In this document: one piece after another, positions 86 through 7,826 of the stretch
How positions within the stretch are numbered: the stretch's first letter is position 1
Layout of the letters: every line of letters starts with the position of its first letter
Source: Octopus sinensis
Lineage: Eukaryota
Reading direction: 5' to 3'
Length of the DNA stretch: 8,461 nt
Assembly: GCF_006345805.1 (NCBI RefSeq)
Contig: NW_021828433.1
Location: forward strand, 1-8,461
Notes under the pieces: model-generated
What the model saw: the letters and a program-made list of their open reading frames with translations, nothing else
Told to the model about the DNA's origin: nothing
Database searches by the model: none
Translations under genes and position numbers: made by a program

Positions 86-247
86 GTACATAATTATCAA
101 CCCAAATTATGGTACATAATTTATCAACCCCAAAAGGATGAAAAGCAAAGTCGACCACGGCGGAACTTGAACTCAGAACGCAGCAACGGGGAACTGCAGC
201 AAAGCATTTCGCCCAGCGTGCTAACGGTTCTACCAGATCGCAGCCTT
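86..247 (-). mobile_element. 3'-truncated tRNA-derived SINE (Octopus-type)
   Basis: Minus strand reads AAGGCTGCGATCTGGTAGAACCGTTAGCACGCTGGGCGAAATGC...GAGTTCAAGTTCCGCCGTGGTCGACTTTGCTTTTCATCC. It has an A-box-like start and a B-box-like GAGTTCAAGTTCC (162-174), and is preceded on the minus strand by (ATT)n. Resemblance to an abundant octopus SINE is recalled, not searched. Confidence 0.75.
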
Positions 248-250
248 AGT

Positions 251-265
251 ATGATAATAATAATG

Positions 266-313
<48 letters not shown>

Positions 314-365
314 TAATAATAATAATGATGATAATAATAATAATAAAAATAATTAATAATATAAT
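251..365. repeat. (TAA)n microsatellite, imperfect
   Basis: Direct reading; gives the poly-Ile/Leu artefact in ORF 246..647. Confidence 0.97.
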
Positions 366-372
366 GCTATAG

Positions 373-560
373 GTACTATTACTACGACTACCAGCACCAC
401 ATCTACTACTACTACCACCACAACAACCACAGGTACTACTACTACTACTACTACTACTACTAATACTACTACTACTACTACTATTAATACTAATACTACT
501 ACTACTATTACTATTACTACTACTACTACTAGTACTACTACTTCTACTACTCCTACCATG
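373..560. repeat. (TAC)n microsatellite, imperfect
   Basis: Direct reading of TAC/TAT/CAC units. Confidence 0.93.
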
Positions 561-1060
561 ACCACCACCATCACCATAACTACCATCACTTCCACCATTA
601 TTCATCGCTGCCAAAGTAATTAACAGCATCATTGTAGGAATCAGCACTTCCCGCCACCACCAAAACCACCGCCAATACTAGAACTGTAGACAGAGTCTAA
701 GGCAATCACCACCGCTACCTTAAACACCATAATCACCAGCTTCAGTATTACAAGCACCAGCGCCACCACTGCAACCACCACCACCACCACTATTTCCACT
801 AACACCAGCACCCCAACAACCAACAGCAACCCTAACGCCAAAACGGCATTAAGGATAACAACAACAACAACAGCAAGCAATATGACATCATTGCCACCAT
901 TAACCTTTGCATCTCCTCCACCACTCCAACCACCACCACCACCATCACCACCACCACCACCACCACCACCACCACCAATATCAACAACAGCAACAACAAC
1001 AACAACACTAATGACGATGACATCTTGGTAAAATATCCGCAACAATAATAAAACCATGGT
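561..1060. repeat. Low-complexity (CCA)/(CAA)/(ACA) trinucleotide region; purest (CCA)n run at about 931-976
   Basis: Direct reading; source of the poly-Val/Gly ORFs on the minus strand. Confidence 0.9.
599..674. repeat. Direct repeat copy B (of 1-75)
   Basis: See copy A. Confidence 0.95.
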
Positions 1061-1086
1061 AACAACGAAGAAGAGGGGGGTAGAAT

Positions 1087-1130
1087 CCCCACCCAGTCCC
1101 CAGTCACCCAGTCACCCAGTCCCCCAGTCA
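1087..1130 (-). repeat. 7-8-bp minisatellite (CACCCAGT)x5; G-quadruplex motif on the minus strand
   Basis: Minus strand TGACTGGGGGACTGGGTGACTGGGTGACTGGGGACTGGGTGGGG has six runs of at least 3 G with 1-5 nt loops. Confidence 0.85.
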
Positions 1131-1318
1131 ACCACCGTAAAATCCGAAATACCCACCTTTACCTTCTTAACAACTTTTCTTCCAGCCTACTTAAACAACA
1201 TCTTCAAAACTTTCCGGAAGCCTTAAGGCTTTTTTCCTTGCAAATGTCTCTCTCGATCACCCCACCCTCTCTCTCTCACTCGCCCCTTTTGCTTCCTCTT
1301 TCCCACTGTCTTTAATAT

Positions 1319-2182: not shown

Positions 2183-2243
2183 CATATATATATACATATA
2201 TATACATATAAATATATATAATATATGTATATATATATATATG
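2151..2243. repeat. (TA)n microsatellite with TACA interruptions
   Basis: Direct reading. Confidence 0.97.
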
Positions 2244-2735
2244 TCAGATCTCGACTACTGGGGTCGACTAGAAAGTTGAAACTCTATTCACTCCAACGAT
2301 GCTGTGAACGCTACAATATCTGTATGATATGGAAAATATTCCATCAGCACTGTCCAAATGATGTTGGCATCACCTTCAAAATACACCCAAGACTTGGACC
2401 CCGTGCCATCCGTCCACAGCAAAAATCTAAATCGCATCTCATAACAACAATACGGCACAATTATTTCACCTCAATTGGACCCGCTCTCTTCAACATTACA
2501 CCAGGACACCTCAAAACAGAAACTGACCACACAAAATTCAAGAAGTATTTGGACAAATTCCTTCAAACAGTCCCGGATAAACCACCCACACCTGATATGT
2601 CTCCGCAAACAATAACTCTCTGCTCGAATGGGCCTCGGTGCCCAAATCCTGAATTGAAAAACTTCACCAGGTGGTACTATTAAGTTAGACATGGCCTGGG
2701 CCAATACTGGCCAAAACCTTGCTAAGTATTCTATG
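2244..2735 (+). mobile_element. 5'-truncated CR1-group (CR1/L2/Crack-like) LINE: ORF2 C-terminus plus 3' UTR
   Basis: Restoring one base near 2273 and one near 2594 gives SDLDYWGRLE-KLKLYSLQRCCERYNICMIWKI...FTSIGPALFNITP..LK....FKKYLDKFLQTVPDKP.TP-YVSANNNSLLEWASVPKS* (TGA 2650-2652). This carries the typical YW.RL..L.LYSLQRRRERY / GP.LFN.LP / FK..LDKFL..VPD.P / NSL motifs. A 3' stem-loop GGCCA-ATAC-TGGCC lies at 2699-2712, and the element ends in ATTCTATG (2728-2735). Confidence 0.88.
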
Positions 2736-3239: not shown

Positions 3240-3718
3240 AAGTCATTATTCACTTTTATTTTGAGATTTCTTGCCAATAGAGAAAGAACCGTTTTCTAAC
3301 CTAGATCAAAGTCTCCTTCATTGGAATTTCAATATCAACAACAAGGTATTTTTGTTTGTATGTTTGTATGTATATGTGCAGATTTGCAGATTTTATGTAT
3401 GTTTTTCCGTATGTATTCTCATGCATATATTTGCATATCTAGACATGCTCATATGTATTTAAATGATAATCTTCAGGAAAGTTTTACAGATTTTCACAGT
3501 TCCATTGATGGATTGGATCTGTAGTCTTCGAATTAGCTTTCTCATTTCTGGTTTTGAGAAGCTTAATTTCTTAACATTGGTATTTAGGCAGTGTGTTACA
3601 TATCCCAGGTCCCCAATAATTACAGGTATAAACCTGAACTTGTAATCTGGATAGAGTAACTGCAGATTTATCAATAGTTCTCTTTTTCACTAATCTTCAG
3701 CTTTATGTTACCATTCGC
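3240..3718 (-). mobile_element. 5'-truncated non-LTR retrotransposon with restriction-like endonuclease (R4/Dong-like): ORF C-terminus plus 3' UTR
   Basis: Minus strand encodes ANGNIKLKISEKEN/(frameshift)/LINLQLLYPDYKFRFIPVIIGDLGYVTHCLNTNVKKLSFSKPEMRKLIRRLQIQSINGTVKICKTFLKIII* (stop 3459-3461). This matches the RLE C-terminal pattern 'NI..K..EK...L..L......IPV.IGALG.V...L...L........LQ.....GT..I'. AATAAA on the minus strand at 3255-3260. The clade assignment is less certain than the RLE call. Confidence 0.8.
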
Positions 3719-3752
3719 TGTATGTGTGCATGCATGTATGTATGTATGTATG

Positions 3753-3786
<34 letters not shown>

Positions 3787-4052
3787 TATATGTATGTATG
3801 TATGTATGTATGCATGCATGCATGTATGTATGTATGCATGTATGTATGTATGTATGTATGTATGCATGTATGCATGCATGCATGTATGTATGTATGTATG
3901 TATGTATGTATGTATATATGTATGTATGTATGTATGTATGCATGCATGCATGTATGTATGTATGTATGTATGTATGTATGTATGTATGCATGCATGCATG
4001 TATGTATGTATGTATGTATGTATGTATGTATGTATGTATGCATGTATGTATG
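3719..4052. repeat. (TATG)n tetranucleotide microsatellite with TGCA and TATA variant units
   Basis: Direct reading; generates six overlapping artefactual ORFs (MYVC/HTYI). Confidence 0.98.
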
Positions 4053-4400
4053 TGTATGTGTATATGCGAGGACGCGTGCCAACTAATACAAGACATATAC
4101 AGGAATGCATATATGCATGTTTGTACGTACGTAGGTATACCTGTACACGAGTGTGATGCATGTATTATGATGCATGTATGCGCACGTAAGTGTAATATAC
4201 GTTTGTACGACTGTGTGTGTATATGTATGCTTATACTTGCGTGTATCTGAAGTATGCTTCTGCGTGACTACGTCTCAGTACGTGCACATATGCATATTCA
4301 TGCCGACGCGTGCACGCATGCGTGCTTGCAAGGATACGTGCATGCATGCCTTTATGAATTCGAGCATGCGTGATAGTGTGAATGCCTGCGGGCGTGTATG
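4053..4400. repeat. Decayed alternating purine-pyrimidine tract
   Basis: TATG/TGCA/CGTG/TACG-rich; contains the 14-bp palindrome GCACGCATGCGTGC (4312-4325). Confidence 0.7.
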
Positions 4401-4790
4401 TTCCTGATTTTCAGTCATTTGCTATTAATTGCTATTAGCAACTCATTGAGATTAATAAGAAAGGGATAAAAACATAGAGACGTCTAAGAGAAAAAGAGGG
4501 AGTTTAGGAAAATAAATCGTATAAACACAAAGAGAAACTAACGGCCCGCACGTTAAAGGGACTACGAAGGCCATCATTTACGGTAGCTAACAAGGCACGA
4601 AATAACTGTCTTGAAGTCTTGTGCTTAGTCTTAAGAAAGCAGCAAAGCAGAAAAGAGACTCATCCAATAATTTAGATGTACATGAAGCAAATGATAGATT
4701 CTATGTGGTCGATTGGTGTGTCAGAAATAGCAGCTAAATATCTCTTGAATCCAATCCGTCAGTTTTAAAGATGAATGTTCCTTCGACGAT

Positions 4791-5191
4791 GTAACGTTTG
4801 TTGCGTCCCCAAAGTCCATTCCCTCCTCACTGTGGTGGCGACGCTGGCAACGGGTAATGTCAGAGCTATGCTGTCGGAAACTTCGGTTCCTGGTTGGGCT
4901 ACCCAAGGCGGATTGGTCTGACACCGAGTGGTATTAGGGCCACAACCCGGCAGACGGGGCTCTGGTGAAAATCCTCGGAATGTCTGTTTCGGCAACCGGC
5001 GGCTCCTCGGTCGTTCTGTCCCTGCGTCTGCGGACAATCTGCGGCAAACTAGATGTCTCTACACGCGGGATCGTTGGGGACCGCTTGTGAAATCCACATA
5101 TTCCCACGAAACTTCTTCCATGAGTAGAATAAGCCGACTCAACCCGCCCAGGGTGAATGTCGCCACAAGTACAAGTAAGTAACGTTTGTTG
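4791..5191 (+). mobile_element. 375-bp retroposed insert (4804-5178) with 13-bp target-site-duplication-like flanks; candidate non-autonomous RTE/Ingi-type element
   Basis: GTAACGTTTGTTG occurs exactly at 4791-4803 and 5179-5191. GC is 203/360 (56%) over 4801-5160 versus 30-38% in adjacent 60-bp blocks. The 3' end is a small stem-loop (5142-5154), then CGCCA and an (ACAAGT)2AA tail. Confidence 0.65.
4803..4918 (+). ncRNA. Candidate HDV-like self-cleaving ribozyme (degenerate)
   Basis: By-eye fold: P1 4805-4811/4836-4842 (6/7 bp), P2 4814-4821/4911-4918 (6/8), P3 4822-4824/4833-4835 (2/3) around loop CCUCACUG, P4 GGGUA/UACCC (4852-4856/4900-4904) containing a C(UUCG)G hairpin, and J4/2 with C4909. 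Not tested with a covariance model. Confidence 0.5.
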
Positions 5192-5249
5192 AATAGTAAA
5201 ACAGTCGAATCAAAATGGTGTCACATTTAAAACGGAATATATGCTAGCA

Positions 5250-5288
5250 TGTACGCATGCACACTCACACGCGTGCACACACACACAT

Positions 5289-5320
<32 letters not shown>
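5250..5320. repeat. (CA)n microsatellite with degenerate 5' part
   Basis: Direct reading. Confidence 0.95.
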
Positions 5321-6552: not shown

Positions 6553-6794
6553 AAGTTCTTTTTCTTATTCTTTTTTCTTTCACTTCTTTCAGTCATTAAG
6601 ACTGCGGCCATCTTGAAGTGGCACAGCCTTGAAGTGATTTTAGTCGACAGAATCAATCCCAGTATATTTTTGAAAGCGTTCGTACATTTTCTGTCTGTCA
6701 ATTTTGCTGAACCGCTAAATTGTGAGGATGTAAACAAAGCAACACCGGCTGTCACGTGGTAGTGGTTGACAAATACTGACGCAAAAAAACATAC

Positions 6795-6996
6795 ACATAT
6801 GAATAAATCTATATGTATGTATATATGTGTATGTCTATATATAAAATGTGTGTGTGCATATATATATAAATCTATCTACCTAGCTAAATATACACACACA
6901 CATATATGCACGCACACTCACACATACTCATACACACACACTCTCTCACACACACAAACACACACACACACACACATATATTATATATATATATAC
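6795..6996. repeat. Compound (TA)/(TG)/(CA) microsatellite
   Basis: Direct reading. Confidence 0.92.
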
Positions 6997-7333: not shown

Positions 7334-7375
7334 TAGATAAATAGAGATACACACACACAAACACACACACACACG
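7227..7375. repeat. Compound (TA)n-(GATA)n-(CA)n microsatellite
   Basis: Direct reading. Confidence 0.97.
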
Positions 7376-7826
7376 CATGACAGGTTTCTTTCATTTTGCG
7401 GCTACCATGTCCACTCACAAAGTTTTGGTCTGCCCGAGGTTATAGCAGAAGACACTTGCCTATGGGGTCGCGCAGACAAATTGAACCCGTAAATATGTAG
7501 TTGGGAAGCAAAATTCTAGCCACACTGCCATGTTTGTACTTGTTGTTGATATTGTTTTTCTCGTTGTCGATAATGGAAAGTGCCTGGAAACAAATCTGTA
7601 AAAAATTGCGGGTCCCCCCCCCCACTTGATCGTAATTCTAAATACATCCATGTCATTAAGATTATCTTTTGATGTGGAATCAGCCCCCAAGAACACAAGA
7701 GATCTAGAATCAGAACCAATACTAAACTATCATGGAATTCAAAGAGAATACAGACGATAAATACCAAAAAAAACCATATCAAAACAAAACACAAATAAAT
7801 AAAATGCATCACATAGATTTCCGTAT

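What the first reader, a model, noticed from the sequence alone, without database searches (positions are those of the whole stretch)
4803..4918. HDV-like ribozyme fold beginning at the very 5' edge of that insert
Seen: all HDV-type elements occur in the right order. P1 is GUCCCCA/UGGCGAC (extendable to 8/9 bp from G4803); P2 is GUCCAUUC/GAUUGGUC; the L3 region reads CCUCCUCACUGUGG; UGGCAAC follows P1; P4 is GGGUA/UACCC enclosing GGAAAC(UUCG)GUUCC; and the end reads GGCGGAUUGGUC, with C4909 at the catalytic position. Established: HDV has CCUCCUCGCUGG, UGGGCAAC and GGCGAAUGGGAC at these places, and HDV-like ribozymes process the 5' ends of R2, RTE and L1Tc/Ingi retrotransposons. The predicted cleavage site (before G4805 or G4803) lies within 2 nt of the TSD boundary, as expected if self-cleavage defines the element's 5' end. 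P1, P2 and P3 each have mismatches and P1.1 is ambiguous, so this copy may be dead. Inference: a ribozyme-headed SINE-like system in a cephalopod-like genome.
Basis: partly seen in the sequence, partly recalled or inferred. Interest (0 to 1): 0.8.

Follow-up and report, generated by a model that had tools for sequence, protein, structure and literature searches.

The report
Ribozyme-like head of octopus retroposon
A 376-base retroposon copy in an octopus genome starts with a sequence that is probably a worn self-cutting RNA of the hepatitis-delta type, as known in Dong/R4, RTE and R2 jumping genes; this is a new example of a known trick, and cutting is untested.

Summary
The insert is real: a 13-base duplication (4791-4803 and 5179-5191) flanks 375 bases of 56% G+C in a 39% window.

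The fold alone is weak. Rfam gives only 14 bits against a cut-off of 44. P1, P2 and P3 all have mispairs. A conserved L3 base is changed in either register. A published HDV descriptor scores the region no better than about 10% of shuffles.

Three pointers nevertheless name G4803 as the first ribozyme base:
- the duplication boundary;
- the only Rfam hit in the region, an HDV-like family whose model position 1 falls on G4803;
- a 15-of-18 match to the 5' end of the silkmoth Dong element, whose HDV-like ribozyme was shown to cut at that end (about 1 in 2,000-10,000 by shuffles).

The host is an octopus. In Octopus vulgaris, Dong-R4 and RTE are the largest LINE groups, and both clades carry such ribozymes in other animals.

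Verdict: probably (about 0.7) the ribozyme head of a short non-autonomous non-LTR element, and this copy is probably impaired. It is a new member of a known kind. I could retrieve no other copies, so neither covariation nor cleavage was tested.

The parts
4791..4803 (.). Left copy of the target-site duplication, GTAACGTTTGTTG. Its last G may instead be the first base of the element, which would make the duplication 12 bp.
   Evidence: Exact 13-base repeat of 5179-5191.
4803..5178 (+). The whole inserted element, 375-376 bp, 56% G+C, CpG observed/expected 0.92. No coding homology, no tRNA-like head and no other copy in the window.
4803..4918 (+). HDV-like ribozyme-like head. Proposed cleavage lies between T4802 and G4803.
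   Evidence: Sole Rfam hit RF02682, 14 bits, model position 1 at G4803. Consensus alignment p about 0.003. Anchored descriptor p about 0.018. Match to the Dong 5' end, 15 of 18.
4803..4810 (+). P1 5' strand, GCGUCCCC. It pairs with 4837-4844 (A4811-U4836 is a possible ninth pair). C4808.C4839 is a mispair.
   Evidence: Read from the sequence. Duplex -10.7 kcal/mol. Same pairing in the Rfam alignment.
4814..4821 (+). P2 5' strand, GUCCAUUC. The core G4814-A4818 pairs with U4914-C4918, with U4815.U4917 mispaired. An alternative is 4818-4823 with 4908-4913.
4822..4836 (+). P3/L3 core. In the Rfam register, P3 is C4825-G4835 and C4826-G4834 (plus U4824.U4836) and L3 is UCACUGU 4827-4833.
   Evidence: L3 departs from the published UYYHCG(N)Y at a conserved C or G in either register.
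4837..4844 (+). P1 3' strand, GGCGACGC.
4845..4851 (+). J1/4 and the top of P4, UGGCAAC. U4845 and G4846 can form P1.1 with A4829 and C4828. GGCAAC equals the conserved GGCAAC of the RF02682 consensus.
   Evidence: alignment. The P1.1 pairing is read from the sequence.
4852..4904 (+). P4 domain. GGGUA/UACCC closes a 43-nt insert that holds the GGAAAC-UUCG-GUUCC hairpin (4877-4891).
   Evidence: The minimum-energy fold keeps the closing helix, but the domain is no more stable than shuffles (36% fold as well).
4905..4913 (+). J4/2, AAGGCGGAU. Candidate catalytic C4909 sits in C-G-G-A, which fits the published CNRA. C4903 is the alternative candidate.
   Evidence: Descriptor. Alternatives.
4914..4918 (+). 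P2 3' strand, UGGUC (extendable to 4911-4918).
4919..5164 (+). Body of the element. One frame is nearly open, but it has no protein relatives. Its function is unknown; it presumably carries the 3' recognition region for the partner reverse transcriptase.
5165..5178 (+). 3' tail, ACAAGTACAAGTAA: a short direct repeat and not poly(A), as in stringent LINE-dependent elements. It sets the orientation of the element.
   Evidence: Read from the sequence.
5179..5191 (.). Right copy of the target-site duplication.

Best explanation
The insert at 4803-5178 is a full-length copy of a short non-autonomous non-LTR retroelement of an octopus. It has the same build as the SIDEs of Drosophila R2: a LINE 5' end joined to a LINE 3' end.

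Its first 116 bases descend from an HDV-like self-cleaving ribozyme of the kind that heads Dong/R4 and RTE LINEs. The inferred mechanism has three steps.
1. A source copy is transcribed as part of a longer host transcript.
2. The ribozyme folds. P1 is 4803-4810 with 4837-4844. P3/L3 lies at 4822-4836. P1.1 uses U4845 and G4846. P4 is 4852-4904. C4909 sits in J4/2. P2 is 4814-4818 with 4914-4918. The ribozyme cuts just 5' of G4803, so the RNA begins exactly at the first base of the element.
3. A partner LINE's reverse transcriptase recognises the 3' region and the ACAAGT-repeat tail and copies the RNA into a nicked target. This makes the 12-13 bp duplication.

Shown here: the insertion, its boundaries and orientation, the absence of coding capacity, the octopus host, and the statistical resemblance to HDV-like ribozymes and to the Dong 5' end.

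Inferred: the ribozyme ancestry, the cleavage site, the partner LINE and read-through transcription.

This particular copy probably cleaves poorly or not at all (my estimate of activity is about 0.3). It has a C.C mispair in P1, U.U mispairs in P2 and P3, and a change at the conserved C-G of L3.
For: 1. Insertion. An exact 13-bp duplication and a G+C jump of 56% against 39%.

2. Rfam. Of 4227 Rfam families, the only match at E up to 10 in 4790-4930 is an HDV-like ribozyme (RF02682). It lies on the sense strand, covers the full model and has model position 1 at G4803. It aligns P1, P3/L3 and GGCAAC. Two neighbouring 141-nt control pieces gave only unrelated noise at E 3-7.

3. Sequence alone. 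The RF02682 consensus aligns to 4817-4851 with score 13. That is reached by 0.3% of 5000 shuffles and is the best score in the window.

4. Published descriptor. With P1 forced to start at 4803-4805, the published HDV descriptor is met as well by only 1.8% of 1000 shuffles.

5. Dong. The 5' end of Bombyx mori Dong is GCTCCCTAAAATCCTACC, taken from the primer in PMC3774820, where cleavage was shown just before that G. It aligns to GCGTCCCCAAAGTCCATTCC starting at G4803 with 15 of 18 bases matched. That score is reached by 2 of 16,874 window positions and by 0.05% or 0.01% of shuffles.

6. Host. The host is an octopus. In O. vulgaris, RTE (106 Mb) and Dong-R4 (93 Mb) are the largest LINE groups, Dong-R4 has the most recently active insertions, and 893 of the 900 recently active SINE families carry no recognised head. 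[quoted passage not shown]

7. Tolerance of flaws. Natural R2 ribozymes often have mispairs in P1 and P2, and one active example has a P3 mispair and odd L3 spacing.

8. Compensation. In the Rfam register the two departures A4829 and U4845 pair with each other, which keeps P1.1.

9. Energy. P1 is a strong helix (-10.7 kcal/mol). Forcing P1 and P3 costs only 4 kcal/mol against the nested optimum.
Against: - The Rfam score is 14 bits against a cut-off of 44. With E = 1.5 it lies within the noise range taken alone.
- That alignment skips P4 and puts a G where the catalytic C belongs.
- The HDV, CPEB3 and mosquito HDV-like models gave nothing.
- P3 has only 2 Watson-Crick pairs. L3 misses the conserved C or G in either register, and the inactive sow-bug R2 ribozyme has changes at those same two conserved L3 sites.
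- P2 is weak (-3.2 kcal/mol) and sits 3-5 nt from P3.
- The catalytic C is ambiguous (4909 or 4903).
- Unanchored, the descriptor score is ordinary. The nested fold and the P4 domain are no more stable than shuffles.
- The duplication is perfect and CpG is not depleted (0.92). The copy is therefore young, and its flaws were probably already present in its source.
- I found no second copy anywhere, so there is no covariation and no consensus.
- The Dong match covers P1, J1/2 and P2, parts that usually vary between lineages.
Confidence: 0.7

Rival explanations
1. Chance resemblance. The insert is a 5'-truncated 3' end of a LINE, or an unrelated short retroposon. Its G+C-rich, CCUCC- and GGUGG-rich first 116 bases merely happen to resemble an HDV-like core.
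For: The Rfam score is far below the cut-off. Every core helix has mispairs, and a conserved L3 base is changed. The unanchored descriptor score is ordinary. There is no thermodynamic signal. 5'-truncated LINE copies are the commonest kind of non-LTR insertion (general knowledge). One frame of the insert is nearly open. No family copies were found that could show a fixed 5' end.
Against: Three independent pointers agree on G4803: the duplication boundary, position 1 of the HDV-like Rfam model, and position 1 of the proven Dong ribozyme. Their joint chance, allowing about 10 comparators and 6 families, is below about 1e-4. The nearly open frame has no protein relatives among 1.84 billion representatives.
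Confidence: 0.22
2. The head is a conserved 5' RNA structure of Dong-R4-type elements that no longer serves cleavage. It might bind the element's protein or help attach the 5' end during integration.
For: The match to Dong lies in P1, J1/2 and P2, which normally drift. The catalytic core is flawed in a young copy.
Against: No direct evidence. The same region also matches the HDV-like catalytic core (L3/P3, GGCAAC, C-G-G-A). In Dong the 5' end was shown to self-cleave.
Confidence: 0.06
3. A classical SINE whose head derives from a tRNA, 5S RNA, 7SL RNA or an snRNA and carries a Pol III promoter.
For: Its size and duplication fit a SINE. Weak A-box-like and B-box-like strings can be read at 4836-4847 and 4886-4896.
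Against: ARAGORN finds no tRNA. Rfam finds no tRNA, 5S, 7SL or snRNA match even at E up to 10. The box-like strings match their consensus poorly.
Confidence: 0.02

Closest known systems
HDV-like ribozyme at the 5' end of Dong (Bombyx mori) and R4 (Ascaris), R4 clade of non-LTR retrotransposons (PMC3774820)
   Same: The ribozyme sits at the very 5' end of the element and cuts at the junction. The first 18 bases of Dong match the first 20 bases of the insert at 15 positions, both counted from the cleavage-site G. Dong-R4 LINEs are abundant and recently active in octopus.
   Different: Dong is autonomous, about 5 kb long, and inserts in TAA repeats. This element is 376 bp, has no coding sequence, and lies in a non-repeat target (GTAACGTTTGTTG). 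I could not obtain the rest of the Dong ribozyme, so only the first 18 bases were compared.
SIDEs (short internally deleted elements) of Drosophila R2 and R2/R1 (PMC3414825), and NARTc of Trypanosoma cruzi (PMC3383444)
   Same: Non-autonomous elements made of a LINE's 5' HDV-like ribozyme joined to a LINE 3' end, and moved by the LINE's machinery.
   Different: Those sit in rDNA (SIDEs) or belong to the L1Tc/ingi clade (NARTc). Here the host is a cephalopod, the target is not rDNA and the partner LINE is not identified.
RTE-clade LINEs with 5' HDV-like ribozymes (cited in PMC3774820 and in the RNArobo paper PMC4870747)
   Same: A 5'-end ribozyme and a simple-repeat 3' tail. RTE is the largest LINE group in O. 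vulgaris.
   Different: I had no RTE 5' sequence to compare. The sea-urchin ribozymes printed have a tighter fold: P3 of 3 bp, L3 UUCACGU and a short P4.
Rfam RF02682, HDV-like ribozyme of Faecalibacterium prausnitzii
   Same: It is the only Rfam family that matches. P1 in register, the CCUC...GUGG core and GGCAAC are shared.
   Different: The score is 14 bits against a cut-off of 44. The bacterial ribozyme is minimal, whereas here a 53-nt P4 domain is inserted. In that alignment the catalytic C is replaced by G.
Hepatitis delta virus ribozymes (Rfam RF00094)
   Same: The same order of elements.
   Different: The family model gives no match at E up to 10.

Membership tests
HDV-like self-cleaving ribozymes | Order of elements of the nested double pseudoknot: P1-P2-P3-L3-P3'-P1'-J1/4-P4-J4/2-P2' | tested here: met
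   All elements can be placed in this order between 4803 and 4918.
HDV-like self-cleaving ribozymes | P1 of 6-7 bp that starts with the cleavage-site G, with its 3' strand directly after P3 | tested here: met
   G4803-C4810 pairs with G4837-C4844: 7 Watson-Crick pairs in 8 positions, one C.C mispair, -10.7 kcal/mol. A C.C mispair in P1 has been linked to loss of activity at low Mg2+.
HDV-like self-cleaving ribozymes | P3 of 3 Watson-Crick pairs | tested here: not met
   Two G-C pairs plus a U.U or C.U mispair in every register. One active R2 ribozyme also has a P3 mispair.
HDV-like self-cleaving ribozymes | L3 of 7-8 nt fitting UYYHCG(N)Y, with the conserved C-G | tested here: not met
   UCACUGU has 2 departures, one of them U for the conserved C. 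The alternative UCCUCACU has A for the conserved G and then needs 2 extra bases.
HDV-like self-cleaving ribozymes | P1.1: two pairs between L3 and J1/4 | tested here: inconclusive
A4829-U4845 and C4828-G4846 pair in the Rfam register. A single sequence gives no covariation.
HDV-like self-cleaving ribozymes | Catalytic C in J4/2, fitting C-N-R-A, just before the P2 3' strand | tested here: met
   C4909-G-G-A followed by (U)UGGUC. C4903-C-A-A is an alternative.
HDV-like self-cleaving ribozymes | P2 of at least 5-6 bp that abuts P3 | tested here: inconclusive
   Four of 5 (or 6 of 8) positions pair, -3.2 kcal/mol, with a 3-5 nt spacer to P3. The strict descriptor is not met. About one third of R2 ribozymes have P2 mispairs.
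HDV-like self-cleaving ribozymes | Score above the curated Rfam cut-off of an HDV-like family | tested here: not met
   Best score is RF02682 at 14 bits against 44.
HDV-like self-cleaving ribozymes | Site-specific self-cleavage that depends on the catalytic C and on divalent ions | not testable with these tools
   This needs transcription and cleavage assays.
Non-LTR retroelement inserted by target-primed reverse transcription | Target-site duplication, a defined 3' tail, and a composition foreign to the flanks | tested here: met
   A 13-bp exact duplication, an ACAAGT-repeat tail, and 56% against 39% G+C.
Ribozyme-headed non-autonomous elements (SIDE or NARTc type) | No reverse-transcriptase coding sequence | tested here: met
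   No Pfam match and no protein relatives.
Ribozyme-headed non-autonomous elements (SIDE or NARTc type) | 5' head and 3' end shared with an autonomous LINE of the same genome | not testable with these tools
   Only 28 kb of octopus DNA was within reach, and it holds neither a partner LINE nor a second copy.
Dong/R4 clade | 5' end like that of Dong, starting at the cleavage-site G | tested here: met
   15 of 18 bases, anchored at G4803; p about 1e-4 to 5e-4.
Dong/R4 clade | Insertion into the clade's specific targets (TAA repeats, 28S rDNA) | tested here: not met
   The target is GTAACGTTTGTTG in unique-looking DNA. The target preference of octopus Dong-R4 elements is unknown to me.
Small-RNA-derived SINEs (Pol III head) | tRNA-, 5S-, 7SL- or snRNA-like 5' head | tested here: not met
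   ARAGORN finds none. Rfam finds no such match at E up to 10.

The most novel reading that the evidence does not exclude
A sizeable share of the many headless 'unclassified SINE' families of octopus are ribozyme-headed parasites of Dong-R4 or RTE LINEs. They would ride on read-through host transcripts and free themselves by self-cleavage. The first 20 bases or so of the Dong-type head would be conserved from insects to cephalopods because the 5' RNA end has a second role, such as protein binding or 5' attachment.
Probability: 0.2. Interest if true: 0.6.

Novelty: new member of a known kind. Interest (0 to 1): 0.45.

Why it matters
HDV-like ribozymes at the 5' ends of R2, R4/Dong, RTE and L1Tc elements have been known since about 2009-2013, and so have short non-autonomous derivatives (SIDEs, NARTc). 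The principle is therefore not new.

The setting would be new. None of the papers I searched links octopus retroelements with ribozymes. Octopus genomes are about 12% SINE, mostly families with no recognisable head, and LINE activity in the octopus brain is under active debate.

If this head is a working ribozyme in the family consensus, it would explain how such headless short elements get a defined 5' end without a promoter of their own. It would also give a simple sequence handle for classifying them and pairing them with their LINE partners.

Tried and rejected
1. Search for family copies, all empty.
- No other copy in the window.
- Protein word search with the minus-strand ORF and a full HMMER search with the 84-aa ORF. 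The latter gave only repeat proteins and a BRC-repeat protein, which I judged spurious.
- Exact look-ups of window ORFs.
- Scans of metagenome, genome and viral contigs by DNA word, degenerate pattern and back-translated peptides.
- The stored part of an octopus transcriptome and a repeat-annotation supplement.
- The one metagenome 'relative' (L003) is a 27-base chance match in a bacterial-looking coding contig.

2. Coding hypothesis (5'-truncated LINE ORF). There is no Pfam hit and no homologue. The nearly open frame fits the G+C content.

3. tRNA or Pol III head. Rejected.

4. A P4-less fold, with P2 formed by 4817-4823 and 4852-4859 and C4848 as the catalytic base. Its P2 is stronger (-5.2 kcal/mol). 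It leaves no linker between P1.1 and the catalytic C, and it scores no better than chance, so I kept it only as a possible competing fold.

5. CpG decay as the cause of A4829. This is weakly supported at best, because the insert's CpG observed/expected is 0.92.

6. The mir-297 and mir-466 Rfam hits at 5236-5299 are artefacts of the CA repeat.

7. The Ruminski 2011 paper, the Webb and Luptak 2011 paper and the original Dong paper are not held in the library.

Full report
THE OBSERVATION

- GTCCCCA (4805-4811) pairs with TGGCGAC (4836-4842) at 6 of 7 positions, with C4808.C4839 mispaired. From G4803-C4844 the count is 8 of 9.
- GTCCATTC (4814-4821) pairs with GATTGGTC (4911-4918) at 6 of 8 positions, with two U.U mispairs.
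- CCTCCTCACTGTGG lies at 4822-4835 and TGGCAAC at 4845-4851.
- GGGTA (4852-4856) and TACCC (4900-4904) enclose GGAAAC-TTCG-GTTCC (4877-4891).
- GGCGGATTGGTC lies at 4907-4918, with C4909.

The insertion itself is solid. GTAACGTTTGTTG occurs exactly at 4791-4803 and 5179-5191. The 375 bases between the two copies are 56% G+C, against 39% for the window and 42% for the flanks. The element ends in ACAAGTACAAGTAA, which sets its orientation. CpG is not depleted (observed/expected 0.92) and the duplication is perfect, so the copy is young.

WHAT THE INSERT IS NOT

- It has no tRNA-like head.
- It has no match to tRNA, 5S, 7SL, snRNA or rRNA models even at E up to 10.
- It has no Pfam domain.
- One frame is nearly open. 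Its 84-residue part has no real relative among 1.84 billion representative proteins. The three hits are repeat proteins, which I judged spurious.
- No second copy exists in the window.

IS THE FOLD MORE THAN CHANCE?

Taken alone, it is not.
- Rfam at its curated cut-offs finds nothing in the window.
- The nested minimum-energy fold of 4803-4920 is no better than shuffles (z = +1.27).
- I took the published RNArobo descriptor for HDV-like ribozymes. It requires:
  - P1 of 6-7 bp starting with G, and P2 of 6-7 bp;
  - P3 of 3 Watson-Crick pairs;
  - L3 fitting UYYHCG(N)Y;
  - J1/4 fitting RN, and J4/2 fitting CNRA.
- I counted departures from that descriptor. Unanchored, the best solution in 4790-4930 costs 4 and is a different fold, rich in G.U pairs. 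Of 400 shuffles, 12% do as well, and about 9% of 150-nt tiles across the window reach the candidate's score.
- In every register P3 has only two pairs, and L3 loses the conserved C or the conserved G. The inactive sow-bug R2 ribozyme carries changes at those same two conserved L3 sites.

THREE POINTERS TO G4803

The picture changes when position and sequence are brought in.

1. With P1 forced to start at 4803-4805, only 1.8% of 1000 shuffles meet the descriptor as well.

2. When only 4790-4930 is searched, the single Rfam match at E up to 10 among 4227 families is an HDV-like ribozyme, RF02682.
   - It lies on the sense strand, covers the whole model and has model position 1 on G4803.
   - It aligns P1 as GCGUC(C)CC with GG(C)GACGC, and P3/L3 as (U)CC-UCACUGU-GG(U).
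   - It also aligns the conserved GGCAAC.
   - The score is 14 bits and E is 1.5, which is noise level by itself. Two neighbouring control pieces gave 2 and 4 unrelated hits at E 3-7 and none from an HDV-like family. What is improbable is the family and the register together.
   - A plain sequence alignment of the printed consensus to the region scores 13. That is reached by 0.3% of 5000 shuffles and is the best score in the window.
   - In this register the two departures from the descriptor, A4829 in L3 and U4845 in J1/4, pair with each other. P1.1 is therefore kept, together with C4828-G4846.

3. The paper on R2 ribozyme evolution (PMC3774820) prints a primer that ends in the first 18 bases of the silkmoth Dong element, GCTCCCTAAAATCCTACC.
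   - The paper shows that Dong RNA cuts itself directly before that G, releasing the 21-nt TAA leader.
   - Anchored at G4803, the insert reads GCGTCCCCAAAGTCCATTCC, which matches 15 of the 18 bases with two one-base gaps.
   - That score is reached at 2 of 16,874 window positions, one of them the candidate itself. It is reached in 0.05% of dinucleotide shuffles and 0.01% of composition-matched shuffles.

So the duplication boundary, the Rfam model and the Dong 5' end all name the same first base. Even allowing about ten comparators and six HDV-like families, the joint chance is small.

THE HOST AND WHY IT MATTERS

- A transposon-derived ORF at 3459-3674 is 87% identical to an Octopus vulgaris protein on a 100-Mb chromosome record.
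- The window shares several repeats, at 68-83% identity, with that locus.
- In O. vulgaris, RTE (106 Mb) and Dong-R4 (93 Mb) are the two largest LINE groups. Dong-R4 has the most recently active insertions (1129).
- SINEs are 11.7% of the genome, and 893 of the 900 recently active SINE families are 'unclassified'.
- R4, Dong, RTE and L1Tc ribozymes all cut at the 5' end of their element.
- A ribozyme head on a short LINE-dependent element of an octopus is thus what one would expect beforehand. It is not a long shot.

TOLERANCE OF FLAWS

In natural R2 ribozymes:
- about a quarter have 1-2 mispairs in P1;
- about a third have mispairs in the first five pairs of P2;
- P4 is highly variable and J1/4 is 0-2 nt;
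- one active ribozyme has a 4-nt P1, a P3 mispair and odd L3 spacing.

On the other hand, a C.C mispair in P1 and changes at the conserved L3 sites go with loss of activity in vitro. The copy here carries both kinds of defect. It is also young, so its source copy probably carried them too.

BEST EXPLANATION (CONFIDENCE ABOUT 0.7)

The insert at 4803-5178 is a full-length short non-autonomous non-LTR element. It is built like the SIDEs of Drosophila R2 or NARTc of trypanosomes. Its first 116 bases descend from the HDV-like ribozyme of a Dong-R4 LINE or, less likely, an RTE LINE.

The inferred cycle is:
1. Transcription runs into the element from upstream host DNA.
2. The RNA cuts itself before G4803.
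3. A partner LINE copies the RNA into a new site, primed at the nicked target, using the 3' region and the ACAAGT tail. This gives the 12-13 bp duplication.

I put the chance that this particular copy cleaves at about 0.3. C4909 is the more likely catalytic base. It sits in GGC-GGA, which fits CNRA, and follows the P4 closing helix. C4903 is the alternative offered by the descriptor scan.

RIVALS

- Chance resemblance on a 5'-truncated LINE end or an unrelated retroposon: about 0.22.
- A conserved 5' RNA structure that no longer cleaves: about 0.06.
- A classical Pol III SINE: about 0.02, tested and not met.

WHAT COULD NOT BE DONE

No other copy of the element could be reached. Covariation, the family consensus and the partner LINE therefore remain untested. 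Only 18 bases of Dong were available.

NOVELTY

This is a new member of a known kind. None of the papers I searched links octopus retroelements with ribozymes. The mechanism and even the non-autonomous build have clear precedents.

Noticed in passing
window 2225-2683 (+): A 152-aa ORF that looks like the C-terminal tail of a LINE protein. I assign no clade. It has no Pfam match. Its relatives, at 38-72% identity, occur only on short JGI and ENA metagenome contigs, so cephalopod-like host DNA seems to be present in those metagenomes.
   Followed up: partly
window 3241-3680 (-): A transposon fragment 83% identical to O. vulgaris chromosome OX597824.1, where part of it is annotated as a 108-aa 'hypothetical predicted protein'. 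That gene model is probably a transposon ORF.
   Followed up: partly
window 110-295, 6576-6799 and 7349-7559: Three further interspersed repeats, each with one to six copies at 68-78% identity in a single 20-kb O. vulgaris locus. I did not classify them.
   Followed up: no
window 3720-4060: A tetranucleotide array of about 340 bp, (TATG/CATG)n. It produces several long spurious ORFs on both strands.
   Followed up: no
window 246-1131 and 1489-1641: Long trinucleotide tracts (AAT, ACT, ACC) and a 9-base periodic array (CGCCAGCCA-like, about 16 units). Both are codon-like in period but of low complexity.
   Followed up: no
window 5236-5299: Sub-threshold Rfam matches to mir-297, mir-466 and mir-3149. 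They are products of the CA/TG-rich repeat just 3' of the insert and are not microRNA genes.
   Followed up: yes
window 4817-4823 with 4852-4859: CAUUCCC can pair with GGG(U)AAUG at -5.2 kcal/mol, which is stronger than the proposed P2. This could be a competing fold that traps the head in an inactive form.
   Followed up: partly
window 5175-5182 and 4791-4794: The element's 3' end (AAGTAA) and the start of the duplicated target (GTAA) overlap in sequence. The true duplication may therefore be shorter, with a 4-base microhomology used for priming.
   Followed up: no
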